Shown here: positions 9,255 to 31,466 of the stretch, piece after piece
How positions within the stretch are numbered: position 1 is the stretch's first letter
Layout of the letters: the number at the start of each line of letters is the position of its first letter
Virus record (IMG/VR): IMGVR_UViG_3300042922_000643
Coordinates: 62,001 to 126,000 of that record
Reading direction: 5' to 3' (one strand)
Length of the DNA stretch: 64,000 nucleotides
Translations under genes and position numbers: made by a program
Notes under the pieces: generated by a model
Databases searched by the model: none
Seen by the model: only the letters and a program-made list of their open reading frames with translations
What the model was told of the DNA's origin: nothing

Positions 9255-10151
9255 TTATGCTTCTGGAACTTTTTTTGTCAAGAAGATATTGAATGCAGAA
9301 ATGTTCTTCGGATTCAAATGTGTGTTTGTTGTTGCACTTTGATCATCGAGGAACTCACGAATGTACGGGTCGAGTTGAGCATTGGATGTTACTCCAAGAA
9401 TCTGCTTGAGCTCCTTCATGCGACTGATTTCTTTTTCGTCCCAAGCGCTATCTGTCTTCTTTTCAGTAGAAGCAGTTGTGGCAGCTTGAGTTTTCGCTGC
9501 TGGTGTTGCTGGGGAAGAGGCAGGCGGTGTGCTCGGCTTCGAGGTTGAAGGCTTAGCAGGCGCTTCCTTTTCCTTTTCATCATCATCTTCATATAGTTCA
9601 AGACCGACACCGAACAGTGTTGCACACTTTTTCAAAGCGTCTGTAGAAGCAGACTTGTAAGCTGTTTCCTGTTCCGATGCGCCACCGATAAGTACCTTGG
9701 AGCCATATTGCTCTTTGATACCATAGCCAGGGACGATCAGGCGGCCTGTAATTTTAACGACAGGTGGCTGTTCTTCGTAGACTTGATTGCCATCCTTATC
9801 TAGCTTGTTTACTTTTTTGTTGCTCACATATTCGGTTACTGCCTTTGGAAGCGATGGAACGACTTCTTCGCTTACAATTTCAAAGCTCCATTTGTAATTG
9901 AAGGCTTCGTTCAGCAAGCGGATAACTGTGTGGCCCCCAATATACGAAAGCGTCGTATTCCCTTGCTTGCGCTGCTTGATCAAACTCTTGTCCAGATCCC
10001 GCTCCAAAACTTCCTTGGCGTGCGCAAAGCTTTCTTCAGTTACCTCACTGTTACATACGTCCAGCGCCAGATACCCTGTAGGTTGGGAGTAAGAAGACAT
10101 TCCAGTCAACAACTCTCCTTGGATTGCGGTACTTCCTTGTAGCTCGCTCAT
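9255..10151 (-). CDS. sak: Rad52/Sak-family single-strand annealing recombinase
   Basis: IKQRK...LSYIGGHTVIRLLNEAFN..WSFEI, KEQYG, AYKSASTDALKKCATLFGVGLELY; Pro/Ala/Thr linker; ATG 10151 with GGAGG. Confidence 0.9.
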   Translation of the reverse strand: MSELQGSTAIQGELLTGMSSYSQPTGYLALDVCNSEVTEESFAHAKEVLERDLDKSLIKQRKQGNTTLSYIGGHTVIRLLNEAFNYKWSFEIVSEEVVPSLPKAVTEYVSNKKVNKLDKDGNQVYEEQPPVVKITGRLIVPGYGIKEQYGSKVLIGGASEQETAYKSASTDALKKCATLFGVGLELYEDDDEKEKEAPAKPSTSKPSTPPASSPATPAAKTQAATTASTEKKTDSAWDEKEISRMKELKQILGVTSNAQLDPYIREFLDDQSATTNTHLNPKNISAFNIFLTKKVPEA

Positions 10152-10206
10152 TTGTTTATTCCTCCATTTATTGGTTTGGAAGGGTAACTTCCCTTTCCAT
10201 GTCTTA

Positions 10207-10235
10207 ATTATACTATACGTTATGACAATTGTAAA
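10207..10235 (-). promoter_or_regulatory. Sigma-A-like promoter for the replication operon
   Basis: TTTACA-N17-TATAAT. Confidence 0.75.
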
Positions 10236-10238
10236 CAT

Positions 10239-10397
10239 CTATTTTTTATAGTATACGGTGTTTTCGTACTTCTCGATTAGGTCCTTAACTGCTTCTTCCA
10301 CGAAGGCGGATATTGGAATACGGCTCTTCTCAGAAAGCTCTCTGAGCTGCTGTATAGTTTCTTCTTCAAGGTAAGATGTGAAACGTTGCTTTGTCAT
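10239..10397 (-). CDS. Ribbon-helix-helix DNA-binding protein
   Basis: KQRFTSYLEEETIQQLRELSEKSRIPISAFVEEAVKDLIEKY; ATG 10397 with AAAGGAGG. Confidence 0.85.
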   Translation of the reverse strand: MTKQRFTSYLEEETIQQLRELSEKSRIPISAFVEEAVKDLIEKYENTVYYKK

Positions 10398-10418
10398 GAC
10401 TAACCCTCCTTTTCTTAT

Positions 10419-10447
10419 ATCATAACATGTATACATTTGTAAGTAAA
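10419..10447 (-). promoter_or_regulatory. Sigma-A-like promoter of the RHH gene with an internal palindrome
   Basis: TTTACT-N17-TATGAT with extended TG; ATGTATACAT palindrome in the spacer. Confidence 0.65.
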
Positions 10448-10449
10448 GC

Positions 10450-10471
10450 AAATAAAAAAGCCCCGAAGGGC
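10450..10471 (-). terminator. Terminator ending the late/lysis transcript
   Basis: GCCC-TTCG-GGGC followed by TTTTTTATTT. Confidence 0.85.
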
Positions 10472-11329
10472 TTACTTGCCTTGAATAAATTTCTGTACCT
10501 CTTCAATCACACTCAGTCCATATGCGTAACCTTTTTCGTAAGCCTCAGCGGTTCGGTCAAAATCAAGTGACCGTATCTCAGGTATCTTTGGATAAAGACA
10601 TAGATAGTCTTTAGAGTTGGCAAGCGCGTAGTCCATGTTCTGATCAATCATGATATCCCAGGCACGACCTAATAGGCTTATGATGCCATGTGTTTCTTCA
10701 TAGCTTCCTTGAGTGCTGATATTGATTGCCACAATTTTATCAGCGCCCATAATGTTAAGTAAATTAGCAGGGAGGTTGTTAACAATACTGCCGTCACCTA
10801 AACTATGCGACCCCCAATGAAGAGGCGGGAATATACCTTGTATAGCAGAAGAAGAGTAGATCATCTTACTCAAGCTGATTCCTTCGGAGTATGTAAGTAT
10901 CTGGCTGTGTTCAGGAAGCTTCGTATTCAGGTCCATTGAAGAGAAAATGACCTGTTTCCCTGCGTTCATATCTGAAGATACTATGCTTAAGGGGACTAGA
11001 ACATCCGTAATGGGATGATCAAAGTTCTGATCTAAAAAGCTTTTTAGTCTCTTTCCCTTCATAATACCTTCAAGATTTTTAAACCGCCAAGGAATCCCCG
11101 TGATGATCTTTAAATAGTTGATATCCAGCAGCTTATTATTGATTTGCTGGATTAAGTCGAGACATTCAGCATGGGAGAAGCCCATTGCCTTCGCAGACGA
11201 CACGATAGCTCCTGCACTTGTCCCTGCATACATATCAGCCACAATACCATGCTCTTCAAAAGAATGGAGGATACCAAGGTGTATTGCTCCCCTGGCTCCC
11301 CCACCTGATAGAGCTACTCCGAGTTTCAT
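10472..11329 (-). CDS. Patatin-like phospholipase
   Basis: ALSGGGARG, GTSAG (catalytic Ser), SSAIQGIFPP, DGS (DGG-like motif). Confidence 0.93.
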   Translation of the reverse strand: MKLGVALSGGGARGAIHLGILHSFEEHGIVADMYAGTSAGAIVSSAKAMGFSHAECLDLIQQINNKLLDINYLKIITGIPWRFKNLEGIMKGKRLKSFLDQNFDHPITDVLVPLSIVSSDMNAGKQVIFSSMDLNTKLPEHSQILTYSEGISLSKMIYSSSAIQGIFPPLHWGSHSLGDGSIVNNLPANLLNIMGADKIVAINISTQGSYEETHGIISLLGRAWDIMIDQNMDYALANSKDYLCLYPKIPEIRSLDFDRTAEAYEKGYAYGLSVIEEVQKFIQGK

Positions 11330-11334
11330 CGGAA

Positions 11335-11670
11335 TCACCCCTTCTGATTATAAAGCTCCTCAAGTCTTGGACCAATGAAACTACGGATCATACTTTCTGT
11401 CATCAGTTCTTTTTCGCCTTGAGTGAGAAATTCAGCGGCATCGATTTTGGACTTCACAAACTTGACAGCATAATCTTCAAGCTTGCCATAGCCCATAGCA
11501 TCAGCCTCGCGGATCTTAATCACTTCAGTGAACACTTCGGTAAGGATAGGACGTATCTTATCCCAAGGCAGTTCAGCGCCACTCTGACGGGCTTTAACAA
11601 CAAGAATACCAGCGGATGCGGCGGCCAATGTAATCACGACAGTTAGCACAACAATAGCAGCAATACTCAT
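11335..11670 (-). CDS. Single-TM membrane protein, LL-H-type holin-like
   Basis: N-terminal hydrophobic helix then a charged helical domain; lysis-cassette context. Confidence 0.55.
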   Translation of the reverse strand: MSIAAIVVLTVVITLAAASAGILVVKARQSGAELPWDKIRPILTEVFTEVIKIREADAMGYGKLEDYAVKFVKSKIDAAEFLTQGEKELMTESMIRSFIGPRLEELYNQKG

Positions 11671-12098
11671 TACTCTTCTCCTCCATGCTCAGTAGTGTCA
11701 GCAGAGATACCTGCTGCGGTATTAACACTTTGATCAATAGCCTCATCAATATGTTTATCGATCTTCATACCCAGTTGATTTAACTTCTGGCGAATAGATG
11801 CGTAGTACTTCAATATTACTGCTACACAAGCCAAACCTTGGAGAGCAACAAAGCCACCATTTACCGCAGGAATTCCCGTAGTTGCAATTACTAATGCTTG
11901 AGTAGCAATTAGAAAGATTGTGTACTGCAAGAGAGGATTAATAAAATCAGGCAGAAGGTGAAAGTCGATCTCTTTTGATCTAGCGGCAACAATAATAGAA
12001 AGTGCTAGATTGATCAGGATAAGCAGGGAGAGGCCTGCGATCATATAGACCACAGGCGAGTCACCTAGATATTGAGAGAGTAAAGCGGAAGTATCCAT
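11670..12098 (-). CDS. Holin (holin-4-like, 3 TM)
   Basis: Three hydrophobic segments; ASIRQKLNQLG C-terminal motif; next to the endolysin. Confidence 0.7.
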   Translation of the reverse strand: MDTSALLSQYLGDSPVVYMIAGLSLLILINLALSIIVAARSKEIDFHLLPDFINPLLQYTIFLIATQALVIATTGIPAVNGGFVALQGLACVAVILKYYASIRQKLNQLGMKIDKHIDEAIDQSVNTAAGISADTTEHGGEE

Positions 12099-12110: not shown

Positions 12111-12947
12111 TTAAAATTTCTCAGGATGTTTAGACGGCGTGTAGTAAACAGCAAGACTAGGGTTCTTGACAATGATAGTAGCATCTTTAGTAGTCTTGTA
12201 AAGATTGTCAGCCCAGGCAATTGCCAGATCAGCAGTAGTGAAGCCTGCCTTCTGTACTTCTTTCTGGAAGACTCTCCATACTTGAGGAGTGGACGGAGTC
12301 GCAGGAGCATTCAGAGCAGCTAGTTCTTTTGCTACAGCATCCTTATAAGCCTGCCAAGCAAGATCCTTGGTTGTGCTAAGATACTTCTTAGCGTAACTGT
12401 TGTCTGTGAAGAATCCTGGACACAGTTTGCCAGTAATGTCATAGTGACGATACATCTGATCTACAGTCAGTCCATGTTCTTTCAGAACCATAGCAGAAAC
12501 CTTTACTGCATTGGCATAAGCCTTTTTAAAGTCGCCGTCAGAATTGACACAGATTTCAAGACCAATCGTGCAATTGTTTGGATATGTACTGCCCAGCTTT
12601 TTAAGAATTCCAGACATGTATTCATCCGCCTCTGCACCAACGTGATAGGCCATCTCTGCTTTTCCCTTTTTCCAAGGAATATTTTCAGTCAGAGTACCAT
12701 CATCTACATTTAAATGTGCAGAAGCCTTTCGAAAAGATACAGGCTTTCCTTTGGCATTGTTATATATTTCGTAAATTTTGCTGGCAATCACGCGCCACTT
12801 ACGATTGAAATAGTTACGGTTAGCAACAGCATTAGAGCCTTTGCCTTCATTAGCTGTCCAGTGAACAACGTGTCCTGTTACCTTATTCATGAGAGTTCCA
12901 GGACGGTTTGGATGCTTAACATCCAGATACATCTGTTTAGTTTCCAT
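12111..12947 (-). CDS. Endolysin, N-acetylmuramoyl-L-alanine amidase (Amidase_2)
   Basis: VVHWTAN, ASAH, AYHVG, IGLEIC, RHYDITGKLCPG; small C-terminal domain after a Pro linker. Confidence 0.93.
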   Translation of the reverse strand: METKQMYLDVKHPNRPGTLMNKVTGHVVHWTANEGKGSNAVANRNYFNRKWRVIASKIYEIYNNAKGKPVSFRKASAHLNVDDGTLTENIPWKKGKAEMAYHVGAEADEYMSGILKKLGSTYPNNCTIGLEICVNSDGDFKKAYANAVKVSAMVLKEHGLTVDQMYRHYDITGKLCPGFFTDNSYAKKYLSTTKDLAWQAYKDAVAKELAALNAPATPSTPQVWRVFQKEVQKAGFTTADLAIAWADNLYKTTKDATIIVKNPSLAVYYTPSKHPEKF

Positions 12948-13527
12948 TGTTCTTATCTCCTTTTTCTTTTTTTCTTACACCATTCAGTAGATGAATTTGG
13001 CGTAAGTGCTTAATAAGCAAACTCATGAACACACAGCATACGGCAATCTCGATGATCGTTTGCTCCAAGCGAAGAGTCATCCATGTATCCCTGTAGGACA
13101 TGTCAAAAGGGATGGCGATAAGATTTTTAACGATGATAGAACAAAAGATTGCGCGGTATACATTGAACGGCGAGTATTTAAAAATCTTTTTAAAACTCTG
13201 ATAGAAGAAGACGATGCTAATAGCAAAGACTTCTCTTACGAAGAGCATAGAATATAAATTCCAATGATAGTAATGAGTGTCTAGATTATAGTGAGTTACT
13301 AGAGACCAAATTAGTGCTAGAGGAATAGCAACTCTATATCCTCCAATCATACAGGCGAACATAGTCGCCACGATTGTAATATCAATGGCCTTACTAGGAG
13401 AAAGTGGTACATATACCATATCTGAGAACCCAGCAAGAATTGCAATTAAACTGAATAGGCCCGAGATGAGTATAGAAAGATAACTTTTACGGCTGATTTG
13501 GATCTTCGTCATTAGCAGACTCTTCAT
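12937..13527 (-). CDS. Multi-pass membrane protein resembling an ECF transporter S-component
   Basis: About 190 aa with 5-6 TM; IDITIVATMFACMIGGYRVAIPLALIWSL resembles the PanT-type S-component helix pattern. Confidence 0.55.
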   Translation of the reverse strand: MKSLLMTKIQISRKSYLSILISGLFSLIAILAGFSDMVYVPLSPSKAIDITIVATMFACMIGGYRVAIPLALIWSLVTHYNLDTHYYHWNLYSMLFVREVFAISIVFFYQSFKKIFKYSPFNVYRAIFCSIIVKNLIAIPFDMSYRDTWMTLRLEQTIIEIAVCCVFMSLLIKHLRQIHLLNGVRKKEKGDKNNGN

Positions 13528-13945
13528 CGGTAGATCCTCCTTTGTTCTTTGTCAGACTAAGGTATAGGTTCCCCAAGGTTTCAGCGAGTTTGTTATGACC
13601 AAGCTTAGCCGTATTCTTTGTTGCCGACACAATTTCAAGTCCCACCAGAGCGATGATCAAAGACAATCGTGCAGTATCAGGCAGTCCAGTCACTCCGTCA
13701 AAAGCATGAAACATGGCGATCCATAGCACATAGGTAAAAACTTTGCCCCAGAATTTCTTCATTAGGGATGGCAACTTAAACTGTCCTTCTTTTCTAGCGA
13801 CCTGTCCTTCAAAAATGAGATCAATAAACATGGCGATAAATAGATAGGAGAGCTGATGGTTGAGCGGACCAATTGCAAAGATAACTGCGCCTTTAAGAAA
13901 TAAAAGCGGCTCTTGTTCGAAGAAACTTCTGTTCAATAGTAACAC
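13487..13945 (-). CDS. Holin, phage holin family 4 (toxin secretion/lysis)
   Basis: LFIAMFIDLI...ARKEG...KVFTY...HAFD...EIVSATKNTAKLG pattern. Confidence 0.8.
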   Translation of the reverse strand: MLLLNRSFFEQEPLLFLKGAVIFAIGPLNHQLSYLFIAMFIDLIFEGQVARKEGQFKLPSLMKKFWGKVFTYVLWIAMFHAFDGVTGLPDTARLSLIIALVGLEIVSATKNTAKLGHNKLAETLGNLYLSLTKNKGGSTDEESANDEDPNQP

Positions 13946-13966: not shown

Positions 13967-15217
13967 CTACAAGTCGTCCAAATTTTTGTAAGTATAATCA
14001 ATCTTGATATTTCTGATCGTAGGTATAATATCGCCCTGTTTCTTCAGTATCGTTTTGACATAAATCTTCTGGATGGGCGCAAGGATCTCGTTACCGAAAT
14101 CGAATTCGTTTGTCATGGCCTTGTTATAGTAGAGTTTATGCTCAACCAAATCATCGATAGATGATTCTGCACCCTGAGCCGCACTCACTGTAGGCGTCTC
14201 TATTGTAAAGAACCGTTTCTTTGTTCCTTCAATAGAAAACTCAGTGACGAATTCTGCCACATCACTATTATAGACGCGGTACTCCAAACCGATATCTTGA
14301 AACCCATAAACGAAGTCTCTCTTCCCCTGATTATAAAACCAGTATGGCTGGGTGAAGAAAATCTGTATCTCTGTAACTTCGATTTTAGGAAACGAGAACA
14401 TCAGCTTACCAGCATCTTTAATCGGGATAGGTTTATCATTGTTGTTTTGATCTTTCTCTATGGGGAAATTAGGTAACCTATACCACGTATCACCGTAACC
14501 TTTATACTGAATATCTGCAATAGTCATTGAGTATTCTGGATAGGGATGAAGTGTCAAAATATTGGCAAATATGTTATTTAACATAGTCAAAGGTAGTTTG
14601 ACATGGATAATACCGTATACCTCGCTTACATTACTTTCTTCTGCAAAACTAGAGGTATGTGCCCAGAAGGTATTATTGCTGCGATCTACTGCGCGAAGAA
14701 GCTTGACGTCTTCAGGCTTGTAGTAAGTAGGTAGTCCTGTTGTTTGGTCAATAGCTTGTGTGTTGTTAGATTCAGAGAGCGTTACAGCTAATGAGCTTGG
14801 CAAAATAACTTGCCCATCATCAGTTGTATATGAAAGTTTAGATAGGCGATCACTATCAGGTAGAGTTGCAATACCATACAAGGTATCAATCGTTGCGCCT
14901 AGCGATCCATTATTGATAATACCATCAAGGGTATACATCGATTTAATCAGATGCTGCTTTTGAAGACTTTGCTCTTTATAAAGCAGATCTGTTTTAATCT
15001 TCTCTAGCTGAGTAGTTAATGCGTTGATCTTGTTCTGCAAGAAGAAGTTCTCACGTACCAAGATATCCATGTTCTCAGCGATCTCCTGATCATGCTCGTT
15101 TGCGATATTAAATAGCGTGACTAGGTCCTGATGAAGATCATTTTGAAGTCGATTAAACTCCCGAGAACTAGACGGCCCTTTATGTAGGTTAGGGTTATTC
15201 TGAGATATAGGTTGCAT
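13967..15217 (-). CDS. Virion structural (baseplate-like) protein, paralogous family member
   Basis: N-terminal GPSSSREFN..DL..LF coiled coil, jelly-roll-like core, FVYGFQDI strand, C-terminal IPTIRNI. Confidence 0.7.
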   Translation of the reverse strand: MQPISQNNPNLHKGPSSSREFNRLQNDLHQDLVTLFNIANEHDQEIAENMDILVRENFFLQNKINALTTQLEKIKTDLLYKEQSLQKQHLIKSMYTLDGIINNGSLGATIDTLYGIATLPDSDRLSKLSYTTDDGQVILPSSLAVTLSESNNTQAIDQTTGLPTYYKPEDVKLLRAVDRSNNTFWAHTSSFAEESNVSEVYGIIHVKLPLTMLNNIFANILTLHPYPEYSMTIADIQYKGYGDTWYRLPNFPIEKDQNNNDKPIPIKDAGKLMFSFPKIEVTEIQIFFTQPYWFYNQGKRDFVYGFQDIGLEYRVYNSDVAEFVTEFSIEGTKKRFFTIETPTVSAAQGAESSIDDLVEHKLYYNKAMTNEFDFGNEILAPIQKIYVKTILKKQGDIIPTIRNIKIDYTYKNLDDL

Positions 15218-15229
15218 GACTTCTCTCCT

Positions 15230-16000
15230 TTATAGGTTATCGATAATATTCTGGATTTCTTCATCCAAAATATTGATCTGGGATTTGATAGAACTATTGA
15301 TTGGTTGTAGGTGATATGGATTTCTCTCAACATATGTTAAAGATATATCACTAAAATCAATCTTGACCTCAGGCAGGTTACTACCAGTAGTATATAGATC
15401 TATATTGATTGTGATATCTTCCTTATGAAGACAGGTGATATAAACTCCATAGTAGTCCCCATCATCAAGAACCTGTTCTACTAGAATACCTTCGCCCTGA
15501 TTTACATTACGACTACCAATAGTGAATCCTAGGGGCGAGCCTTGACTACCTGTGGCTTTCATCCGAAGATAAAGAATCTGTCCTTCCTGAACATTGATCG
15601 TTGTCTGTACACCAGAAGGACTCGATGTTCCAGGAGAGTAAAGGCTATAGCCTGTGCTTGTTGTGCCTTTGACACAGCCACCATAAACTACCCATCTACT
15701 ATCACTAAGCTTAATATCTGGTAGCACGGCTTCCCCCTGACGAAAGAGGTCCGCCGCGGTACTCGTACTAGATGTGATCGTCACTTTGTCACCACTGAAG
15801 TAAGCTGCAAAGTTATCCCTGATAAAATCGGTTTGGCCTCTAGTTAAAGAGAAAATGAATTCATCTCGGTCTATCCATTTCCCCAGCAATTTAATATCAT
15901 GCAGGGTTTCATTAACCGTATTCCCGTATTTGATTGTTTCTGTCGGCCCACGAAAGCGAGCGTTACTTCGAATCATCGAAGGCCGTTTTTTGTACTCCAT
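15230..16000 (-). CDS. Virion structural protein with CBM-like insert
   Basis: N-terminal RFRGPTET..HDI motif shared with the 13967-15217 protein. Confidence 0.65.
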   Translation of the reverse strand: MEYKKRPSMIRSNARFRGPTETIKYGNTVNETLHDIKLLGKWIDRDEFIFSLTRGQTDFIRDNFAAYFSGDKVTITSSTSTAADLFRQGEAVLPDIKLSDSRWVVYGGCVKGTTSTGYSLYSPGTSSPSGVQTTINVQEGQILYLRMKATGSQGSPLGFTIGSRNVNQGEGILVEQVLDDGDYYGVYITCLHKEDITINIDLYTTGSNLPEVKIDFSDISLTYVERNPYHLQPINSSIKSQINILDEEIQNIIDNL

Positions 16001-16014
16001 CTTTCATTCACCCC

Positions 16015-18105
16015 TTAGCTGAAACGTAGTCGATAGCTTTTAAGTTTTGGTGAGGCAACAGTAATATCATCATCTCTTGTCAGCACAGCTTTGAAAAGAA
16101 TTTCATCTTTAACGGTGCCATCTATGTAGTTGTAATAGAATTCGTACTCTAGCCCTGGCGTAGCATGATTGAGAATGACATAGGTTGAAGTATTAGACTC
16201 TAGTAGTGAGTACTTTGTATAGTCCGTATTGATCGTATTATATCTTAGATCAAACAGTGACACTTTCATAAGGGCCTTTGCCTGAGAATATACATTTGAA
16301 CCATAGGACTTTGGATCAAAAGATATATCAACTGTTGAGCCATTTACGGTGTTTACACTTTCCCTGGTGTATACAAGGACGACAATTTCGTTCCATCCAT
16401 TTTGAAACAGATAGTTCAGTCGGTTTGTACTGTTTGGAATCCCTTGGAACAAAAGCTTGCCATTCATATAGATCGCAATAGGATCAGTACTTGCAGGCAC
16501 AGCTGTTACAAGTTCGCTAGTCTTTGTTGAAAAGACTCCTAACGTGAACATGTAATTCATGGCTGTGGTTGTGCGCTCTTTATTTAGAACGACACCTGGT
16601 TTTCCGTCAGCAATCTGGACATAATCAATATTGACCTGATTCTGTGGTGCAACCCAGTCGCTCATGCTCGGGAGATGGCTTGCATGTCCACTATGTTGAT
16701 ATTCGTAATGTTTCATACCCCAAGTATTCTTTCCTGCAAATAGCTGTTCTGTGCCATCAATAATCTTTCTATTTGCAACTTCACCGATCTTATAAAAGCG
16801 TATTCCATGTGCATACAAACTTTCCATTTCATATTCGCCAATAGAGATGCTGGTGTCAATAGAGAAGGTGTTCGGGATGGATGTCGAAATATTCTTGAAG
16901 TCGATGATCTGATCATACTTTGGAAGCTCTCGATTCACTGGGGATAGGTCTTTCCACTCAGGTTCTCCAGTCTCCACAGGCAGTGCAATGTAATATTTGA
17001 TATCCGTTCCATTGGGAAGCTCTTCATCAACTAACAATGAGACTTTATCTATGGTGAAGTTCTTTGTGGAGTCTGGTTCAGCATCCAGGACTTTAGAGTA
17101 AAAATCAGAACTTGTAGAATAGATAAAGGTATAAAAGCTAATATTTTTAATCCCCATCAAATAGGAGTACTTAGTTTGGCTGACTCCATTTACTTCTGTG
17201 ATAGTTTCATTATCTGGTTCGTTCTTTGCCATCAAGAAGCGGATTCTGCTTACCTCCAGCATCGGAAAATCAAAAGTATATTCACTATAGACTTCGATAG
17301 CCTCTTCGTAATAAGGCAGTGGAAACCAATTCAGTCCGTCTGAAGTACCCTCTACACGGATAAAGGTTGGTTTAATAGACTGAAGAGATAACGTAATACG
17401 ATTGATTTGCTGCTTCTTCTCAAACACAACATGAAAGTAAGATGGTACGGCAATGCTCTCTGTTGTCAGGATTGTTGTTTGCCAAGTCGTGTTAGACTTA
17501 TCACTTAAGGCATCTTGCGTTGTACCACTGATCGTTTTCACTTCTGGAGTTGGAGAAATTAGCGGCGAAATTTCAAACGCTGTATAAGCCGCAGGAACAA
17601 TCTTCTTACTGGTTTTCTTTACGTCATTAAGTCGTACTTCATGATTCGAGATGTCTACATTCGCAGTTGTCTTTGTCAGATCAATAGAACTCATGTCCGC
17701 AAAAATATCATACACGCTATTCAGATATCCCGAGTTTCCATAAAGCAATATCAGTTCCTTCAGTTGATTCTCCAAAGAAAGTAACTGGTAATCCAGCTTG
17801 TCTTTCTCAACATCAAACTTATTAAAGTGTTTCAGTGATTTGTTCTGTTGATCTACGGCATTTTCATATAGTGTTTCTAAGTCTTCATAGGCTCGATCCA
17901 GAACATTATTATAGTCACCAGAACGTGCTGTACTTTTTGCGCGTACATTTTTGAATTCTAAAGATGGACCACTGAGGTTAGTCTTCTCTAGATATTGATT
18001 TACCTTCCAGATGAATTCCTTGGAGGAAGGGAGGTTCCCCTTTTGGAGTTCCTCCCGTAAGATTTTGTTTACGGCTTTGGCAAAGCGTCTTTCTCTAATA
18101 CTCAA
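16015..18105 (-). CDS. Virion structural (baseplate-like) protein, paralogous family member
   Basis: Coiled coil, DALSD..NTTW jelly-roll start, YLMGIKNI strand, C-terminal SPKLKSYRL. Confidence 0.7.
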   Translation of the reverse strand: MSIRERRFAKAVNKILREELQKGNLPSSKEFIWKVNQYLEKTNLSGPSLEFKNVRAKSTARSGDYNNVLDRAYEDLETLYENAVDQQNKSLKHFNKFDVEKDKLDYQLLSLENQLKELILLYGNSGYLNSVYDIFADMSSIDLTKTTANVDISNHEVRLNDVKKTSKKIVPAAYTAFEISPLISPTPEVKTISGTTQDALSDKSNTTWQTTILTTESIAVPSYFHVVFEKKQQINRITLSLQSIKPTFIRVEGTSDGLNWFPLPYYEEAIEVYSEYTFDFPMLEVSRIRFLMAKNEPDNETITEVNGVSQTKYSYLMGIKNISFYTFIYSTSSDFYSKVLDAEPDSTKNFTIDKVSLLVDEELPNGTDIKYYIALPVETGEPEWKDLSPVNRELPKYDQIIDFKNISTSIPNTFSIDTSISIGEYEMESLYAHGIRFYKIGEVANRKIIDGTEQLFAGKNTWGMKHYEYQHSGHASHLPSMSDWVAPQNQVNIDYVQIADGKPGVVLNKERTTTAMNYMFTLGVFSTKTSELVTAVPASTDPIAIYMNGKLLFQGIPNSTNRLNYLFQNGWNEIVVLVYTRESVNTVNGSTVDISFDPKSYGSNVYSQAKALMKVSLFDLRYNTINTDYTKYSLLESNTSTYVILNHATPGLEYEFYYNYIDGTVKDEILFKAVLTRDDDITVASPKLKSYRLRFS

Positions 18106-25298: not shown

Positions 25299-28200
25299 CT
25301 ACAGCACCTGCCCTTCTATAATATTCCCTAGTACTTTCGTTTGTCCACTCTTATCGAATCTCATTTTCGTGTCCCACATTGCATTTAGATCTGCGGTAGA
25401 GATTAGTCTCGGAGCAATAAACAAATTCTTGCAATAGGAATCCCAGCAATCTTCATCCCACGAGTATCCACCTACTCTTACGATACCATTAAGACCAGCC
25501 ATTGTTTGCCCAGTGCAATTGGAAGTATAAATTGCTCCACTGGCTCCATAGATTTCCGCGGTCATCACATCTGTTGTGGAGTTATACTTTAAGACATACA
25601 AAGCCCAATCCTTATAATCTTGTTCAGATAGTGCAGAGCCACTACCATATTTGCTGACATAAGTCGTAGCAGTATTGCTATATCCTACAAGTTGCCAGCT
25701 AGCTACAGTTGCAGTAGCTCCCCACTTAAACCCAATACAAGCATCTGACTGACCAAGTACGTAGTAGTCTCCGACTGCAATCGGAACAAATCGGTTTCCT
25801 GTCGTCGTTGTCATACTCCAAATATTAGGCTTCGCGATTACCCCTACGGTCCAATCATTATTTGCATTTATGATGGAAGGAACTGTGTACTTTAAGATAC
25901 TATCTCCAACAGTTGTGTTTGGTGGAATCGATGGATTCTGATAAGGGAGATTTGTGGAGTTCGTCCATTGTACCCCATTAATATAGAGTTCACCAGCATT
26001 TGCAGAGTACCCCCATGAGGGTCCATCCACAAGCAGAGCTCCAGTATAAGCTTCTGATGCCTTGGATGTTCTCCAGAAGTAATGCCATTGCCCGTCAGCA
26101 ATGATAGAAGCATCTCCAGCAATCGTAGTAAAGATTGCGCGTGTCCAGTCAGAGGTGTAGAGACCAGCCGCAGTAAAAGCAGTGACTCCAGCAGCAGCAG
26201 ATGTCTTATACCATCCTGATACAGTTACATAGCTATCTGCTGTTACGGTGAAGAGTGTTCCATATGGTCCTTCCCATCCATGCCACTGGCTTGCCGAACC
26301 TGTCTTGGTGAATTTCCACGTCTTGGAATTTGGAATAGGCCCTGGCTCTGTTAGAGTGACATCAGTAATAATGCCACCATTATTCGTCCAAGGAGCTACA
26401 TCATAAAATAGATTCTTAAAAGAAGCTCCAATGAATACTCCGTTCTGATCATAGATAGTATTTGTTTCAGTGGTTGGCGGATTCAGATGGTTAATATCTA
26501 GAGAATCTACAGTAAGTGGATAGAACAAATCTCCACCTTGTAAACCCATAGGGCCTTCTACAATCCCTTTTGTGATAAGATCTCCGCTAGCCTTCAGTGA
26601 GCTCTTTGGTTTTGCAAGTGCAGAAATCTCTTCCGTATTTAGATTCCTATTGTAAACCGCTAGATTACTAATGGGTCTGTTGGCAGGAGAGCTATTTGTA
26701 CTTGTATCGTAGAACTTCATTCCGCCTACACGGGTTGTTGGCGTTGTTGCGCCCTCGCGGTTGATGAGGAATAAGAGTCTTACGTATCTTGTGCCATATC
26801 GGAACAAGCTTCCTGATCCACCGCCTACACCTGTTATAGTTCCCGTGTACTGCGTCCAGCTCGTTGGCACGGTTACGTTACCTGCGGCGATGTAGTTATA
26901 TCCGCCGCCGTCAGTAGAACAAGCCACCGCTGTTCCAACAGGAAGTGTTGTTCCCGTCCAAGCACTTGCGAGTGTGATCGTTTTTGCTGTGGTATTCAGG
27001 GTAACATAACCTACTGTTCCATCTGAGTATGTATAGTTCTGGTAGTTTCCTGTGATCCACCAAGAGAATTGCTTCGAGTAATGATAGACTCCAGCGGTTC
27101 CTGCCGCCCATCCCGTTGTGCTTGTTAGATACACTACGGTATCTCCTGGCTTCAATGCTTGAGCTAATGTGGTAAGACCCGCGTGAGTGACTCGGTTGTG
27201 CGGAATAACCGCTTTGTTCTTATCAAAGCAGATTACTCCATAGTAGAGTTTACTGGTTGCGGCCATTCCTTTGAACCATCCCGTTAGAGTATAGGGTCTA
27301 GTTGGGTCTACGGGAATATACTCATCAGAATATACCGTAGAGTCTGCACTTGTTCTAGATAAGCAACCTGCTTGCCCATCTGGACTATCTCCAGCTACAT
27401 ATACAAAGGAACTGAAGTTGGTATTATCACCTAAGTTAGCTGATCCATTCTTAATCAGGTTATTATTTACGCCATTTCCTACTCGCATATATTCAATGTT
27501 TGTGGCGTCAATCACAGGAACAGCGACCCCACCATAGCTTCCAGGCATCATAACCCCATCTATCCATAGCTCAAGACGAGTGGGCATAGAGATGACTACG
27601 AAGTGATGAACGCCATCGGTCTGAACAGGAGCAGACACTTCTTTGTAATTCGTAAGACCAGTACCTGAGCGTAGACGGAATGTGCCATCACCCAGCTGGT
27701 GAAGAGATAGAACATTCAAATCCATTGATCCATTATCGAATGAAAAGAGGGCCTGCTCAGATCCTGTAACCGTACGAGAATCTACTTCATAGTCAAGGGA
27801 TATACTAATCGGAGCCGTTGGTTTAAATGGTATCGAAGTGACACTTGCGGTAGGATATGATCGACTACCTATCACATAGGAAGTAGAGAATTGTCTCGGT
27901 TCCATTTGCGGTGCGCACAACCACATCCGCTTGCCTGACGGAATACTAATTACAAAGTCTAGTGAGTCCGTGTCATTGTTAACCTCTGTTCTTACGAAGT
28001 TAAAGACGCATCTCTTCCATCCTTCTTCAGGGTCAACTTGGATTTGGTTTGTCCACTTACCATGGTTCTCTCCAGCAGCAGCAGTAAGTCCTTGGATCTG
28101 TCCAGGAGCTTCTGTCTTCACATAAACTGAGATTGTGTAATCTGTTACGTCAGCCTGAGGAGAGTAATCACCGTAAGAGTAATACCATCCGCTACCACCA

Positions 28201-31200
28201 CTTGGTCCAGTAATACTTACAACAGGTGAGTCGATTCCGTCTGGAGGTGCAATATCATTCCATGTAATATTTAGAAAGTTATCTTTTGTCCAGCCTGTGT
28301 CAAGGTTCGTATTCGTCACGACATTTGTTGTGGCTTCTTCTACTAGCAGACCTTTACTGGATACACTCGCTCCTGATCCTAGAGTCGCAGGCGCAGACTG
28401 TCTAATCTTAAAGTTCCGTAGGTACCCCTTAAAGGCATTATATCCGCCCCAAGCTGGGACGTTTGCATAGTAGTCATTGGCAAGATTACTAACCTGAGAT
28501 ACGTTCGATGTGTATGCTCCGTCAGCTCCAATGAATAATCCCGTACTCCATCGATTTACGATATCTCTCTGACGATATGTTACCCAGTCTCCATTACCAG
28601 GAGTTGTTTCTAAACTGACGTCTGCTAAGGCTGGAGTTGTTGCACTTAAAGCTCCATTAACATAAAGTCTCAGATATTGTTTATCATACGTCAGTCGAAC
28701 AGTATTCCATGTGCCTGCGGTAACGAGCGCAGAGCTTGTTGCTGAAATACCCCATCCATTATTATGATACTCTGCTGGTTCTTTAGCCGCGGCACCGACT
28801 GTGCCTATAAGGGCTCCAGTACTTGAGAGGCGTAGATTAAAGATGTATCTTGAAGCATAATTGTATCCTGAGTAAAAGCTAGCCAATGCATAGTTACCCA
28901 GAATGTCTGCTTTAAACTCAATCTCTACATCTAAGAACTTTGTCTTATCAAAGACTAGAGCTACAGGTAGTCCTCCTGTTTGTGTTCTCAAGTAGCAAGT
29001 ATTATTACCGTTAAAATAACAACCCTCGTTAGAGAATATTGGTGCATCGACTGGTAAGAAGAATTCACCATAGTCTTTTAGATAATTCTCAGTGAGAGTA
29101 GCTGTTGTAGAAACATACCCGTCAGTAGTACCATCAAAAGGATAATAAACAACAGGAGTATTTACTTTTGGACCCCGCTCATTGACCTCCCCCGTGATAT
29201 TAAGACTATTCTTCTTTAGTCTGCCAAGGACACCAGTCACTTTGATAGTATACTCTGAACCGTACACAGTTCCTGCTCCGTTTGTAGCATAGGCTCTAAT
29301 ATAATATGTAGTTCCAGAGGCTAAGTTTTTGATGTTCGATTTAAATATTCCCGTCCCTGTACGAGCACCTAATGATGAATATGTGCCAAGGGCAATAGTC
29401 GGAGCAGTAGCAGTACCCCATACATGGCCATGCTGTGTCACGCCGCCGCCTGTTGCGGTGAGACTCCCACTAATAGATATAGTATTGCCACGGGTTACAG
29501 GAGTTGATGTTGTGACTGTAGCACTAGAGTACGAAGTCGTTGCACTAGCATTAGCTGAGTTTGGACTCTGAAGCAAAGTAGTTGTAGTAGGCAGATAGGC
29601 ATAGGCAGTATATGCAGTGTTTGGCGATAGCCCTGTCCACGCGCTTCCCGTTGTCTTGGTTTGCCCATTACATACGATCATTGATCCCGCTGTAGATGAC
29701 CACACGACAGAAGAGGAAGTGATACTTGAAGATGTTGGCGTACTTGGCGCTGCCTGAGCAGCCTTAGCTGTGGTAAAGCTCAATTCAGGTCCATAGGATG
29801 TTCCGTATTGAGTCGTTGCGTAAGACCTAAAATAGTAAGTCGTCACAGGAGAAAGCCCTGTTGCTGAACTACTATATGCGATAGGGCCCGCCATAGCCCC
29901 TAGCGATGTCTTTGTGGTTAAGGCAACGGTAGGGGCTGTAGAGGTGGACCACACATGTCCGTACTGACTGACAGTGCCTCCATCAAAAGTCGTGACTGCC
30001 CCTGTAAGGGTCGAGGTACTAGCAGTTATGCTATTAGCTACGCCTGTCGTTAGCGTTGCAAGACCACTTTGAATTGTATAATACGTATCTAGTGGGCCGT
30101 TAACATTACCCGCATTATCATAAGATCTCCACTGGAAATGATATTTGCCAAATCCGTTCGTTCTATTGAAGGTATATGTATACTGATTACTGCTCCCAGG
30201 AGTTGTTACGTTCTCGGCCGACCAAGCTCCATAGGTCGATCCATTATCCGTACTCTTTCTCCACCAAGCTGATACTCTATTAATACCAGAACCTGCATCT
30301 GTAGAGGTGGCCGTTAAAGCTGCTGTACCTGTATTAGAAGTAGGACTAGTGGTAATGACATCGTTTGGTTTAGTTAAGCTCGGTACTGTTTTATCGTGGT
30401 AACAATAAGCTCGCTGCATAGTACTAACATTTCCTGCGTAGTCATAGGCACGGAAGTCTATGCCCCAGTTGCCCTCTTGTTCTGCTGCTGGGAATGTGTA
30501 AGTCACTGTGAACTGACCTGGTGCTACAGAGCTAGCATTTTGAATCGGATAGTATGTTGCATCAGGCCGTACCATATACACACTTACATATGATATGCCA
30601 ATTGCGTCAGTAACATTCAGTGCAGCAGCGGTAAATGTACCTCCTGTACTTTTATATTGCTGTGGAGAAACAGACCCAATGACTGGAGCTGTTGTATCTA
30701 CACCAAAGTAGTTATTTGAATAGTTAACATCCCCTGTTCCTGTAGACACGGAGTTGACTTGTCCAAAGTCATCCATAACCTGCATACGAACATAATATGT
30801 ACTGCCATTGGTCAGGATACCTGAAGGTAGCGTAAAGCTTCTAGCAGAGCTATCGTATACCCAACCTGTACCATAAAGGACTGCGCTATATGCAGAGTTA
30901 GCAATCTCTAGATTATACGCTGCTTGATATCCAGCGGCATCAGGGTCGCTAAAACTCCAAGTGAATGTAGGTGTTGTTGTTGGTATCCACGTGTTATTTG
31001 CTGGATAAGTAATTGCTGGAGGACTAGGAGCTGTATTGCTTCGTAATACGATGTAGTCTAGGTCGATGGTGACACCACCAGCTTCACCGACGTCGAACCG
31101 CCAGCCTGTAATATTGCCATAGGCAGAGTTCCACCGTACATGGTCACTCATATGAACTACAGTTGTAACCCAGCCACCTGTCCCTGTTAGCCAGTCGCTA

Positions 31201-31466
31201 AAAACAACTTGTACTTCTGTTGCCGAACCATAAGTACTGTTTAGAAAGTAGATTTGGAATCGTCCAATACCGACTCCAGCAGGTGCTTTCCATCTGATTT
31301 CCATAGCCTTATATGTATTCGGATCAAATGAGCCAAGGCCATTCATATTAATATATGGATCACCATGGGCGGTGGTCAGCGTTAATACACTACCACCAAC
31401 GGAGTAGGTAAATCCATAGTAACCATAGGGCATTGTATCAAAATTCTGGCGAAACGCTTCAGCCAT
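25299..31466 (-). CDS. Large tail fibre/receptor-binding protein with Ig/FN3, LamG and CBM-like domains
   Basis: DTTAP/DKTVP Ig linkers, two GHVW...YY.R.YAT FN3-like repeats, EEATTN motif, several LamG-like segments. Confidence 0.85.
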   Translation of the reverse strand: MAEAFRQNFDTMPYGYYGFTYSVGGSVLTLTTAHGDPYINMNGLGSFDPNTYKAMEIRWKAPAGVGIGRFQIYFLNSTYGSATEVQVVFSDWLTGTGGWVTTVVHMSDHVRWNSAYGNITGWRFDVGEAGGVTIDLDYIVLRSNTAPSPPAITYPANNTWIPTTTPTFTWSFSDPDAAGYQAAYNLEIANSAYSAVLYGTGWVYDSSARSFTLPSGILTNGSTYYVRMQVMDDFGQVNSVSTGTGDVNYSNNYFGVDTTAPVIGSVSPQQYKSTGGTFTAAALNVTDAIGISYVSVYMVRPDATYYPIQNASSVAPGQFTVTYTFPAAEQEGNWGIDFRAYDYAGNVSTMQRAYCYHDKTVPSLTKPNDVITTSPTSNTGTAALTATSTDAGSGINRVSAWWRKSTDNGSTYGAWSAENVTTPGSSNQYTYTFNRTNGFGKYHFQWRSYDNAGNVNGPLDTYYTIQSGLATLTTGVANSITASTSTLTGAVTTFDGGTVSQYGHVWSTSTAPTVALTTKTSLGAMAGPIAYSSSATGLSPVTTYYFRSYATTQYGTSYGPELSFTTAKAAQAAPSTPTSSSITSSSVVWSSTAGSMIVCNGQTKTTGSAWTGLSPNTAYTAYAYLPTTTTLLQSPNSANASATTSYSSATVTTSTPVTRGNTISISGSLTATGGGVTQHGHVWGTATAPTIALGTYSSLGARTGTGIFKSNIKNLASGTTYYIRAYATNGAGTVYGSEYTIKVTGVLGRLKKNSLNITGEVNERGPKVNTPVVYYPFDGTTDGYVSTTATLTENYLKDYGEFFLPVDAPIFSNEGCYFNGNNTCYLRTQTGGLPVALVFDKTKFLDVEIEFKADILGNYALASFYSGYNYASRYIFNLRLSSTGALIGTVGAAAKEPAEYHNNGWGISATSSALVTAGTWNTVRLTYDKQYLRLYVNGALSATTPALADVSLETTPGNGDWVTYRQRDIVNRWSTGLFIGADGAYTSNVSQVSNLANDYYANVPAWGGYNAFKGYLRNFKIRQSAPATLGSGASVSSKGLLVEEATTNVVTNTNLDTGWTKDNFLNITWNDIAPPDGIDSPVVSITGPSGGSGWYYSYGDYSPQADVTDYTISVYVKTEAPGQIQGLTAAAGENHGKWTNQIQVDPEEGWKRCVFNFVRTEVNNDTDSLDFVISIPSGKRMWLCAPQMEPRQFSTSYVIGSRSYPTASVTSIPFKPTAPISISLDYEVDSRTVTGSEQALFSFDNGSMDLNVLSLHQLGDGTFRLRSGTGLTNYKEVSAPVQTDGVHHFVVISMPTRLELWIDGVMMPGSYGGVAVPVIDATNIEYMRVGNGVNNNLIKNGSANLGDNTNFSSFVYVAGDSPDGQAGCLSRTSADSTVYSDEYIPVDPTRPYTLTGWFKGMAATSKLYYGVICFDKNKAVIPHNRVTHAGLTTLAQALKPGDTVVYLTSTTGWAAGTAGVYHYSKQFSWWITGNYQNYTYSDGTVGYVTLNTTAKTITLASAWTGTTLPVGTAVACSTDGGGYNYIAAGNVTVPTSWTQYTGTITGVGGGSGSLFRYGTRYVRLLFLINREGATTPTTRVGGMKFYDTSTNSSPANRPISNLAVYNRNLNTEEISALAKPKSSLKASGDLITKGIVEGPMGLQGGDLFYPLTVDSLDINHLNPPTTETNTIYDQNGVFIGASFKNLFYDVAPWTNNGGIITDVTLTEPGPIPNSKTWKFTKTGSASQWHGWEGPYGTLFTVTADSYVTVSGWYKTSAAAGVTAFTAAGLYTSDWTRAIFTTIAGDASIIADGQWHYFWRTSKASEAYTGALLVDGPSWGYSANAGELYINGVQWTNSTNLPYQNPSIPPNTTVGDSILKYTVPSIINANNDWTVGVIAKPNIWSMTTTTGNRFVPIAVGDYYVLGQSDACIGFKWGATATVASWQLVGYSNTATTYVSKYGSGSALSEQDYKDWALYVLKYNSTTDVMTAEIYGASGAIYTSNCTGQTMAGLNGIVRVGGYSWDEDCWDSYCKNLFIAPRLISTADLNAMWDTKMRFDKSGQTKVLGNIIEGQVL

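What the first reader, a model, noticed from the sequence alone, without database searches (positions are those of the whole stretch)
12937..13527. ECF S-component-like protein wedged between holin and endolysin
Seen: a roughly 190-aa polytopic membrane protein overlapping both neighbours. Established: S-components are vitamin-binding subunits that dock on the host EcfAA'T module. Inference: it could be a nutrient-sensing lysis timer or antiholin, a vitamin-scavenging gene, or a receptor decoy. The family call is by eye only.
Basis: inference. Interest (0 to 1): 0.6.

Follow-up and report, generated by a model that had tools for sequence, protein, structure and literature searches.

The report
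Holin-linked S-component-like phage membrane protein
A soil jumbo phage carries a six-helix membrane protein with the fold of a bacterial vitamin-transporter subunit, always encoded directly after a holin gene, so it is probably a new kind of lysis-control partner rather than a nutrient importer.

Summary
ORF 12937..13527 (-) encodes a 196-aa six-helix membrane protein ("X"). It overlaps a Phage_holin_4_1 gene by 41 nt and an Amidase_2 endolysin gene by 11 nt.

The by-eye family call also holds. Two AlphaFold models, of X and of a 20%-identical relative, match only ECF S-components at the top of a whole-PDB search (PanT Z 14.0 and 16.8). Profile-profile comparison with true PF12822 proteins gives 99.6% probability.

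X is not a typical S-component:
- It misses every Pfam cut-off.
- Its family is tiny: 39 proteins among 1.84 billion representatives, none found in species genomes.
- The phage has no EcfT or ABC ATPase.
- The best-conserved part is a new cytoplasmic C-terminal motif, LRxxHxLNG, that true S-components lack.

In 17 of 17 loci with upstream DNA, X directly follows and overlaps a homologue of this holin, while the endolysin, second holin and patatin genes vary.

My best reading (confidence 0.45, inferred) is a holin accessory that times lysis, built on an S-component scaffold. Docking on host EcfT is not excluded, because helix 1 keeps a small-xxx-small motif. Vitamin import is less likely. I rate it a new variant of a known kind, interest 0.6.

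The parts
13487..13945 (-). Holin gene (152 aa, GTG start, about four hydrophobic segments, acidic C-terminal tail). Its last 41 nt overlap the start of X.
   Evidence: Pfam Phage_holin_4_1 E 7e-9; PHROG_199 holin. A homologue lies directly upstream of X in 17 of 17 loci with upstream DNA. Alignment A3.
13536..13543 (-). Shine-Dalgarno AAAGGAGG for X, 8 nt before ATG 13527, inside the 3' end of the holin gene.
   Evidence: Read directly from the sequence. There is no such site before Met37.
12937..13527 (-). X: a 196-aa six-helix membrane protein with the ECF S-component fold plus a C-terminal cytoplasmic extension.
   Evidence: AlphaFold2 pLDDT 81.8, pTM 0.75. PanT 4rfs_S Z 14.0, rmsd 3.6 A, 166 aligned; ThiT Z 12.8; RibU Z 12.6. 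Foldseek top 10 are all S-components. hhalign to PF12822 proteins 99.6%.
13450..13464 (-). Helix-1 small-xxx-small motif (S22-G-L-F-S26), at the place of the AxxxA motif that S-components use to dock on EcfT.
   Evidence: Column counts in the 45-sequence alignment A4: position 22 has A20/S6/T2/G1 of 40 letters; position 26 has S26/G6/T4/A1 of 42. The role of the motif comes from PMC11109136 and PMC4820897.
12976..13005 (-). Clade-defining cytoplasmic motif L175-R-Q-I-H-L-L-N-G-V184 (LRxxHxLNG[V/I]), followed by a basic tail. It lies beyond the end of canonical S-components.
   Evidence: L175, R176, H179, L181, N182 and G183 are at least 90% conserved in 45 sequences. This is the most conserved region (mean 0.66). 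The exact motif is in 37 of 45. The hhalign match to true S-components ends at residue 178.
12111..12947 (-). Endolysin (N-acetylmuramoyl-L-alanine amidase, 278 aa, no hydrophobic segment). Its start overlaps the end of X by 11 nt.
   Evidence: Pfam Amidase_2 E 3.2e-15; PHROG endolysin 1.3e-23; no TM segment.
11670..12098 (-). Second holin candidate (142 aa, 3-4 hydrophobic segments).
   Evidence: Weak Phage_holin_4_1 match, E 0.017. Conserved in L003/4, L006 and L007.
11335..11670 (-). 111-aa protein with one N-terminal TM helix. Its start overlaps the stop of the previous gene.
   Evidence: Hydropathy. Conserved in L003/4, L006 and L007. No family match.
10472..11338 (-). Patatin-like phospholipase (288 aa), the last gene of the same-strand run.
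   Evidence: Pfam Patatin E 1.6e-27. PADLOC phospholipase effector models 1.8e-12. Conserved at this place.
10458..10473 (-). Terminator-like hairpin with a T-run directly after the patatin gene. It is the likely end of the transcription unit.
   Evidence: Consensus scan only.

Best explanation
X is a divergent, phage-specific offshoot of the ECF_trnsprt (PF12822) S-component family. It keeps the six-helix fold and the family's core residues, and it has gained an invariant cytoplasmic extension of helix 6 (LRxxHxLNG[V/I] plus a basic tail). It is translated from its own strong ribosome-binding site inside the 3' end of a Phage_holin_4_1 gene, so it enters the cytoplasmic membrane together with the holin. 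I take it to be an accessory subunit of that holin: most likely an antiholin-type timer that holds the holin back until a change in membrane or cell state releases it, less likely a co-holin. The conserved cytoplasmic face (the L2 GGY turn, the L4 SPxNVYR loop and the C-terminal motif) would be the interaction or output surface. Shown here: the gene, its fold, its homology, the motif and the gene linkage. Inferred: expression late in infection, contact with the holin, and any effect on lysis timing.
For: Fold: S-components take ranks 1-13, 15 and 16 for X (Z 14.0 down to 8.6), with unrelated chains at Z 7.7 or less. The same holds for the distant relative P0045 (PanT Z 16.8, rmsd 2.9 A, 161 aligned). 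Homology: hhalign of A4 against PF12822-type proteins gives 99.6%, E 2e-23, over 172 columns. The bridging members P0037 and P0048 pass Pfam's PF12822 cut-off. Linkage: a homologue of the window's holin lies directly upstream of X, with overlap, in 17 of 17 loci that include upstream DNA, down to about 16-23% identity of X. Meanwhile the downstream genes change: Amidase_2, or Phage_holin_6_1 then Amidase_3, with or without patatin. Among 50,697 phage records, tblastn finds X and this holin clade in the same three Bacillus jumbo phages. The clade-specific conservation is cytoplasmic, while the outer loops L3 and L5 are the least conserved parts. No terminator separates the structural genes, the holin, X and the endolysin.
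Against: There is no direct evidence of contact with the holin or of any effect on lysis. All loci belong to one broad lineage of 200-250 kb phages, with the same structural genes upstream and Rad52 downstream. The constant adjacency could therefore be inherited gene order rather than functional coupling. X keeps the small-xxx-small motif of helix 1 and the core residues shared with true S-components (GG turn, W74, R98, Y109, E160). That fits a protein that still docks on EcfT or still binds a ligand.
Confidence: 0.45

Rival explanations
1. X is a working group-II S-component. It docks on the host's EcfAA'T module and imports a micronutrient for the phage (an auxiliary metabolic gene). Its place in the lysis cassette is incidental.
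For: S-component fold. Homology to PF12822. Small residues at the helix-1 AxxxA positions, unlike sensor kinases and MreD. Conserved polar residues D49, R98 and E160; E160 lines up with a glutamate in the true S-components P0054 and P0055. The phage has no EcfT or ABC ATPase of its own, as expected for a group-II S-component that borrows a shared module.
Against: No Pfam, NCBIfam or PHROG match for X itself. No near cellular subfamily: the closest true S-components score only E 3e-4 against the family profile. Outer loops L3 and L5, which help close the substrate site in S-components, are the least conserved parts; the best-conserved part is a cytoplasmic motif that transport does not explain. 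The position is fixed after a holin rather than scattered as for typical auxiliary genes. The gene sits among structural and lysis genes.
Confidence: 0.12
2. X targets the host ECF module without transporting anything. It occupies EcfT and either blocks host S-components or reports the cell's ATP state to the holin.
For: Same fold and helix-1 evidence as the transporter rival. S-components bind EcfT tightly after transport, and ATP binding is thought to release them (PMC4820897). An invariant extension of helix 6 on the cytoplasmic side could alter docking. Strict linkage to a holin.
Against: Nothing here tests docking. The host and its ECF module are not identified for this soil phage. Small-xxx-small motifs are common helix-packing motifs.
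Confidence: 0.1
3. X is a stand-alone receptor of the 5TMR (LytS/BtsS) type. The six-helix domain senses a ligand or the membrane state, and the C-terminal helix is its output, acting on something other than the holin.
For: 5TM-5TMR_LYT matches in 7 of 18 and 7 of 24 family members. In the ESM Atlas, a stand-alone 5TMR domain (TM 0.71/0.75) and sensor kinases (TM by query about 0.66) align through to residues 195-196 of X, including the helix-6 extension. S-components and 5TMR kinases share this fold (PMC11109136).
Against: PF12822 scores better than PF07694 in five of the six distant members that match the 5TMR family; the sixth matches only 5TMR. X has no H0 helix, no NXR motif (it has D49-I-T) and no output domain beyond about 24 residues. 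It has small rather than bulky residues at the AxxxA positions.
Confidence: 0.1
4. X has a membrane role unrelated to lysis timing, for example superinfection exclusion or an MreD-like grip on cell-wall synthesis. It sits after the holin only through inherited gene order.
For: MreD (9dvb_D) is in the fold lists at Z 9.1 and 11.1. All loci come from one phage lineage.
Against: No MreD match in any Pfam scan of 42 members at the E-value limits used (1 and 0.1). No PADLOC match. MreD scores below most S-components. The overlap with the holin gene is kept while other cassette genes are exchanged.
Confidence: 0.13

Closest known systems
Group-II ECF transporter S-components of Pfam PF12822 (for example PanT; also RibU, ThiT, FolT, BioY)
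   Same: Six-helix fold with a beta-hairpin in loop L1. N- and C-termini fit a cytoplasmic location by the positive-inside rule. GG turn after helix 2, and W in helix 3, R in helix 4 and E/Q in helix 6 shared with true members. Small-xxx-small motif in helix 1. Encoded away from any ECF module.
   Different: Below every curated family cut-off. Phage-only family of 39 representatives. Invariant C-terminal LRxxHxLNG extension and SPxNVYR loop that true members lack. Fixed position after a holin. No known substrate.
Membrane domains of 5TMR (LytS/YpdA/BtsS-type) sensor histidine kinases
   Same: Same fold (PMC11109136). Weak PF07694 matches in some members. Helix 6 runs on into a cytoplasmic helix, as in the kinases. 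From my own knowledge: LytSR controls the holin-like lrgAB genes, so a sensor with this fold and holin-like proteins already meet in one pathway.
   Different: No H0 helix, no NXR motif, no kinase or other output domain. Small residues at the AxxxA positions. Any link to the holin would be through the proteins, not through transcription.
Phage antiholins and holin partners (P2 LysA, T4 RI, lambda S107, P1 LydB, PBSX XhlA); named from my own knowledge, not tested here
   Same: A membrane protein encoded beside the holin in the lysis cassette. P2 LysA is also polytopic.
   Different: No sequence or fold relation to any of them. X is a full transporter-type six-helix domain with a conserved cytoplasmic motif. 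No functional data.
CidB/LrgB, the polytopic partners of the holin-like CidA/LrgA proteins (own knowledge)
   Same: A small holin-like gene followed by an adjacent gene for a polytopic membrane protein.
   Different: Unrelated families (LrgA/LrgB versus Phage_holin_4_1/S-component fold); cellular rather than phage.
MreD
   Same: S-component-type fold (Z 9.1 and 11.1; PMC11109136).
   Different: Lower structural scores than most S-components. No Pfam MreD match in 42 members. MreD has bulky residues at the AxxxA positions.

Membership tests
ECF transporter S-component (fold class; Pfam PF12822 ECF_trnsprt) | Six-helix S-component fold | tested here: met
   X model: PanT 4rfs_S Z 14.0 (rmsd 3.6 A, 166 aligned). 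S-components take ranks 1-13, 15 and 16; unrelated chains score Z 7.7 or less. Foldseek top 10 are all S-components, TM 0.55-0.70. Distant member P0045: PanT Z 16.8.
ECF transporter S-component (fold class; Pfam PF12822 ECF_trnsprt) | The protein itself reaches the curated PF12822 score | tested here: not met
   No PF12822 match for X at E up to 1, and none in its own genome scan. Only the family members P0037 (32.4 bits) and P0048 (36.7 bits) pass the 30.7-bit cut-off.
ECF transporter S-component (fold class; Pfam PF12822 ECF_trnsprt) | Sequence homology to true members, by profile | tested here: met
   hhalign of A4 against A5, which contains P0054 (PF12822 3.9e-29) and P0055 (2.7e-16): 99.6%, E 2e-23, 172 columns. 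Caveat: the A5 members were themselves found with the family profile.
ECF transporter S-component (fold class; Pfam PF12822 ECF_trnsprt) | AxxxA motif in helix 1, used for docking on EcfT | tested here: inconclusive
   X has S22xxxS26. In the family, position 22 is small in 29 of 40 and position 26 in 37 of 42. It is a small-xxx-small motif, not literal AxxxA. The register against solved S-components was not fixed residue by residue.
ECF transporter S-component (fold class; Pfam PF12822 ECF_trnsprt) | Forms a complex with an EcfAA'T module | not testable with these tools
   The phage genome (251,543 bp, rated 100% complete) has no CbiQ/EcfT and no ABC_tran match. A host module would be needed, and the host is unknown.
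ECF transporter S-component (fold class; Pfam PF12822 ECF_trnsprt) | High-affinity binding of a micronutrient in the outer pocket | not testable with these tools
   Indirect only: D49 and E160 are conserved, but loops L3 and L5 are the least conserved regions (mean 0.19 and 0.17).
5TMR (LytS-YhcK type) sensor kinase membrane domain, PF07694 | Extra N-terminal helix H0, NXR motif between helices 1 and 2, and a cytoplasmic output domain | tested here: not met
   Six helices only. D49-I-T at the motif place. Only about 24 residues follow helix 6. Features taken from PMC11109136.
MreD, PF04093 | Profile match to MreD; bulky residues at the AxxxA positions | tested here: not met
   No MreD match in Pfam scans of 18 and 24 members, at E-value limits of 1 and 0.1. 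Small residues at positions 22 and 26. Fold Z of 9.1 and 11.1 is below most S-components.
Antiholin / holin accessory protein (a functional class) | Membrane protein encoded next to the holin in the lysis cassette | tested here: met
   Overlaps the Phage_holin_4_1 gene in the window and in 17 of 17 loci with upstream DNA.
Antiholin / holin accessory protein (a functional class) | Binds the holin and changes the time of lysis | not testable with these tools
   Needs genetics and biochemistry; see the decisive next steps.

The most novel reading that the evidence does not exclude
X is an energy-sensing antiholin that shuttles between the holin and the host's ECF module. While ATP is plentiful, the module keeps releasing X into the membrane, where its cytoplasmic LRxxHxLNG helix restrains the holin. 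When ATP falls late in infection, X stays trapped, toppled, on EcfT and the holin is free to trigger. That would tie lysis timing to the host's energy charge through a hijacked transporter cycle.
Probability: 0.06. Interest if true: 0.9.

Novelty: new variant of a known kind. Interest (0 to 1): 0.6.

Why it matters
S-components are known as vitamin-binding subunits of ECF transporters. Their fold was recently linked to sensor kinases and MreD (PMC11109136). That paper has no occurrence of 'phage', 'holin', 'virus' or 'lysis', and my search for the ECF and holin terms together found nothing relevant. A phage family that keeps the S-component core, adds an invariant cytoplasmic motif and is locked to a holin gene would be a third reuse of the fold. 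It would also be a new type of lysis regulator for Gram-positive jumbo phages, whose lysis control is poorly known. Three cultured Bacillus phages (KLEB27-3, Edson, vB_BceM_WH1) carry the pair, so it can be tested at once. It also matters for annotation: public gene calls start at Met37 and lose helix 1.

Tried and rejected
- **Complex prediction of X (alignment A4) with the holin (A3):** no answer, score 0.00 against a mark of 0.32, controls not run.
- **Apparent holin::X fusion (P0014/P0059) in a 'Bacillus stercoris' assembly:** considered as Rosetta-stone evidence and rejected. In that contig the holin is split (64 aa plus 294 aa) and the patatin gene is split too. More than 90%-identical copies from other samples are normal 193-195-aa proteins. 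Indel errors are the likelier cause.
- **Direct family scans of X:** Pfam, PHROGs, NCBIfam and PADLOC gave nothing.
- **Profile search of PDB sequences:** only noise.
- **Viral fold library BFVD:** no convincing match.
- **DNA search of phage records:** megablast found nothing. tblastn of P0014 against plasmids found nothing.
- **Pattern scan of 185,579 species genomes with A1:** no relative.
- **IMG/VR scan:** only 4 loci, identical over the match.
- **Sequencing runs:** only three soil-metagenome DNA runs, which may be the source, and no RNA. I did not use read laying, so there is no expression evidence.
- **Substrate call from the best hit (PanT):** rejected. PanT, ThiT and RibU lie within about 1-1.5 Z units for X.
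- **Dual-start motif in X (M1/M6):** not conserved in homologues.
Full report
**1. The observation**

The window is bases 62001-126000 of a 251,543-bp IMG/VR virus record rated 100% complete. GC content is about 0.40-0.46. Only soil-metagenome DNA runs hold it.

On the minus strand there is an uninterrupted run of genes:
- three virion structural genes (16015..18105, 15230..16000, 13967..15217; the last matches PHROG_19670 at 5.6e-39);
- a holin, 13487..13945 (Phage_holin_4_1, E 7e-9);
- the ORF in question, "X", 12937..13527, 196 aa;
- an amidase endolysin, 12111..12947 (Amidase_2, 3.2e-15);
- a 142-aa membrane protein, 11670..12098 (weak holin_4_1 match, E 0.017);
- a 111-aa single-TM protein, 11335..11670;
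- a patatin-like phospholipase, 10472..11338 (1.6e-27).

A terminator-like hairpin at 10473-10458 directly follows the patatin gene.

ATG 13527 has AAAGGAGG 8 nt upstream. The public gene call and the ESM Atlas start at Met37, which has no such site and loses helix 1. Full-length homologues cover the N-terminus.

Hydropathy and AlphaFold2 (pLDDT 81.8, pTM 0.75) give six helices, a beta-hairpin at residues 39-49 between helices 1 and 2, and a long helix 6 (149-194). Both termini are basic, which fits N-in/C-in topology.

**2. What X is**

X itself matches no curated family:
- Pfam gives only a noise hit.
- PHROGs, NCBIfam and PADLOC give nothing.

Structure is clear. In a search of 48,161 PDB representatives, ranks 1-13, 15 and 16 are ECF S-components:
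- PanT 4rfs_S: Z 14.0, rmsd 3.6 A, 166 aligned;
- PanT 6zg3_H: Z 13.4;
- ThiT: Z 12.8;
- RibU: Z 12.6;
- then HmpT, FolT, BioY, NikM, BtuM, CbiM and YkoE.

MreD is at rank 14 (Z 9.1), and unrelated chains start at Z 7.7. Foldseek's top ten are all S-components, with TM 0.55-0.70 but E-values of only about 1e-2.

A second model, of P0045, which is 20% identical to X (pLDDT 87.6), gives the same list with PanT at Z 16.8, rmsd 2.9 A.

Sequence agrees with structure:
- 6 of 18 close homologues and 10 of 24 distant ones match PF12822 ECF_trnsprt.
- P0037 scores E 1.7e-18 against the family profile and passes the PF12822 cut-off. So does P0048.
- The family profile reaches the true S-components P0054 and P0055 (PF12822 3.9e-29 and 2.7e-16).
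- hhalign of the 45-sequence family against those proteins gives 99.6%, E 2e-23, over 172 columns from helix 1 to helix 6.

The 5TMR-LYT family has the same fold (PMC11109136). It also matches weakly, but scores below PF12822 in five of the six distant members that match it. In the ESM Atlas, S-components (TM 0.70-0.72) and a stand-alone 5TMR domain (TM 0.71/0.75) fit equally well.

X is nearest to PF12822. No substrate can be named, because PanT, ThiT and RibU are close to tied.

**3. How X differs from an ordinary S-component**

The family is very small. Only 39 proteins score E 1e-3 or better among 1.84 billion representatives. There are 4 IMG/VR loci and 3 of 50,697 phage records, all Bacillus jumbo phages of 217-234 kb. 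A pattern scan of 185,579 species genomes found none. The viral structure library has no convincing counterpart.

The phage encodes no EcfT and no ABC ATPase.

Conservation across 45 members is unusual:
- W74 is invariant.
- D49, Y109, E160, L175, R176, H179, L181, N182 and G183 are at least 90% conserved.
- The best-conserved region is the cytoplasmic continuation of helix 6 (mean 0.66). The exact motif LR..H.[LI]NG is present in 37 of 45.
- A second clade-specific motif, SPxNVYR, lies in and just after the cytoplasmic loop L4.
- The outer loops L3 and L5 are the least conserved (0.19 and 0.17).

The hhalign match to true S-components stops at residue 178, and P0054 ends there. The motif is therefore an addition.

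Several core residues are shared with true PF12822 proteins: the GG turn, W in helix 3, R in helix 4, Y in helix 4 and E/Q in helix 6.

Helix 1 keeps small residues at positions 22 and 26 (A/S/T/G in 29 of 40 and 37 of 42). This is where S-components carry the AxxxA motif that binds EcfT. Sensor kinases and MreD have bulky residues there (PMC11109136; PMC4820897).

**4. Gene context elsewhere**

In every locus that includes DNA upstream of X, phmmer finds a homologue of the window's holin ending at or overlapping the start of X. That is 17 of 17 loci, with overlaps from about 1 to 86 nt. The loci are:
- KLEB27-3 and Edson;
- L003-L007;
- L011-L014;
- L015-L018 and L008.

L020 was fetched later. 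It shows the same arrangement in its gene calls, with a Phage_holin_4_1 gene overlapping the start of X.

What follows X varies:
- Amidase_2 (the window, L003-L007, L020);
- a short holin and then the endolysin (KLEB27-3);
- Phage_holin_6_1 and then Amidase_3 (L017);
- Phage_holin_6_1 with no endolysin in the locus (L015).

Patatin is present in some loci and absent in others. tblastn of the holin finds the same three phage records as X does.

The invariant unit is therefore holin_4_1 plus X, not holin-X-endolysin. One caution applies. All these loci share the upstream structural genes and a downstream Rad52 gene, so they belong to one deep lineage. Inherited gene order is a competing explanation for the adjacency.

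**5. The most likely mechanism**

Shown:
- X is a real gene, and a six-helix membrane protein of S-component ancestry.
- It has its own strong ribosome-binding site inside the holin gene.
- No terminator separates it from the structural and lysis genes.
- Its distinguishing conserved surface faces the cytoplasm.

Inferred: X is made together with the holin, late in infection, and acts on it. My preferred reading is an antiholin-type timer. The C-terminal LRxxHxLNG helix and the L2/L4 face would be the contact or output surface, and the six-helix domain would be the part that responds to membrane or cell state. A co-holin role is less likely. I put this at 0.45.

Rivals:
- a true vitamin importer using the host ECF module (0.12);
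- a non-transporting binder of host EcfT, which includes the energy-sensing version in the novel case (0.10);
- a stand-alone 5TMR-like receptor with another target (0.10);
- an unrelated membrane role, with inherited gene order (0.13).

The remainder is unknown.

The retained helix-1 motif and core residues keep the ECF-docking ideas alive. The phage-only distribution, variable outer loops, cytoplasmic signature and fixed place after the holin weigh against plain nutrient scavenging. Nothing supports a receptor decoy.

**6. Comparison with what is known, and novelty**

X works, at most, like an S-component that has been given a new partner. By curated thresholds it is not a member of PF12822, though it is clearly homologous. 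It lacks the defining extras of 5TMR kinases (H0 helix, NXR motif, output domain) and shows no MreD signal.

The functional analogies rest on my own knowledge and were not tested here: P2 LysA, T4 RI and lambda S107 as antiholins, and CidB/LrgB as polytopic partners of holin-like proteins.

A search for papers holding at least three of 'ECF transporter', 'S-component', 'bacteriophage' and 'holin' found four, none on this subject. The S-component-fold survey does not mention phages, viruses, holins or lysis.

I rate X a new variant of a known kind, interest 0.6. The fold call is solid and the holin linkage is striking, but the function is inferred from context only.

**7. Limits**

- There is no expression, interaction or phenotype evidence.
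- The single complex-prediction job gave no verdict and is not counted either way.
- The host of this soil phage is unknown. Bacillus is inferred from the three cultured relatives.
- The topology and the side assigned to each motif come from the model, hydropathy and the positive-inside rule, not from experiment.

Noticed in passing
window 10472-11338 (-), terminator-like hairpin 10458-10473 (-): A patatin-like phospholipase (Pfam 1.6e-27; also matches PADLOC phospholipase effector models at 1.8e-12) is the last gene of the holin-X-endolysin run, just before the terminator-like hairpin. It is kept at this place in L003/4, L006 and L007. It may be a membrane-degrading lysis accessory. A paper on phage WO turned up in a text search for patatin, holin and endolysin together (PMC9203015; search listing only, paper not read).
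   Followed up: partly
window 11670-12098 (-) and 11335-11670 (-): Two more small membrane proteins follow the endolysin: a 142-aa protein with 3-4 hydrophobic segments (weak holin_4_1 match, E 0.017) and a 111-aa protein with one N-terminal TM helix. Their genes overlap by one base. Both are conserved in relatives, so the cassette may hold two holins plus an unknown single-pass protein.
   Followed up: partly
window 13419 (Met37 of X) versus 13527: The public gene call (P0001, 160 aa) and the ESM Atlas record start X at Met37. That removes helix 1 and its AxxxA-like motif. The upstream ATG has a near-perfect ribosome-binding site and conserved N-terminal homology.
   Followed up: yes
L019 (GCA_030143775.1, contig JASMRE010000002.1, 223,644 bp): An assembly labelled Bacillus stercoris contains a 223.6-kb contig of this jumbo-phage lineage. 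Its holin is split, the holin C-terminus is fused in frame to X (294 aa), and the patatin gene is split. These are probably indel errors rather than a natural fusion.
   Followed up: partly
L015 4624-4986, L017 4537-4905, L008 882-1259: In the more distant relatives, the gene after X is a holin of another family (Phage_holin_6_1), so X sits between two unrelated holin genes. In L015 no endolysin lies within the locus.
   Followed up: partly
window 9255-10238 (-) and 10239-10451 (-): Downstream of the lysis unit lie a 70-aa ORF and a 327-aa ORF. In relatives, a small ribbon-helix-helix gene (RHH_3) and a Rad52/Rad22-type gene occupy the same position after the cassette. I did not scan the window's own two ORFs against any family library.
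   Followed up: no
window 25299-31466 (-): A 2055-aa ORF lies upstream of the structural genes. I did not examine it.
   Followed up: no
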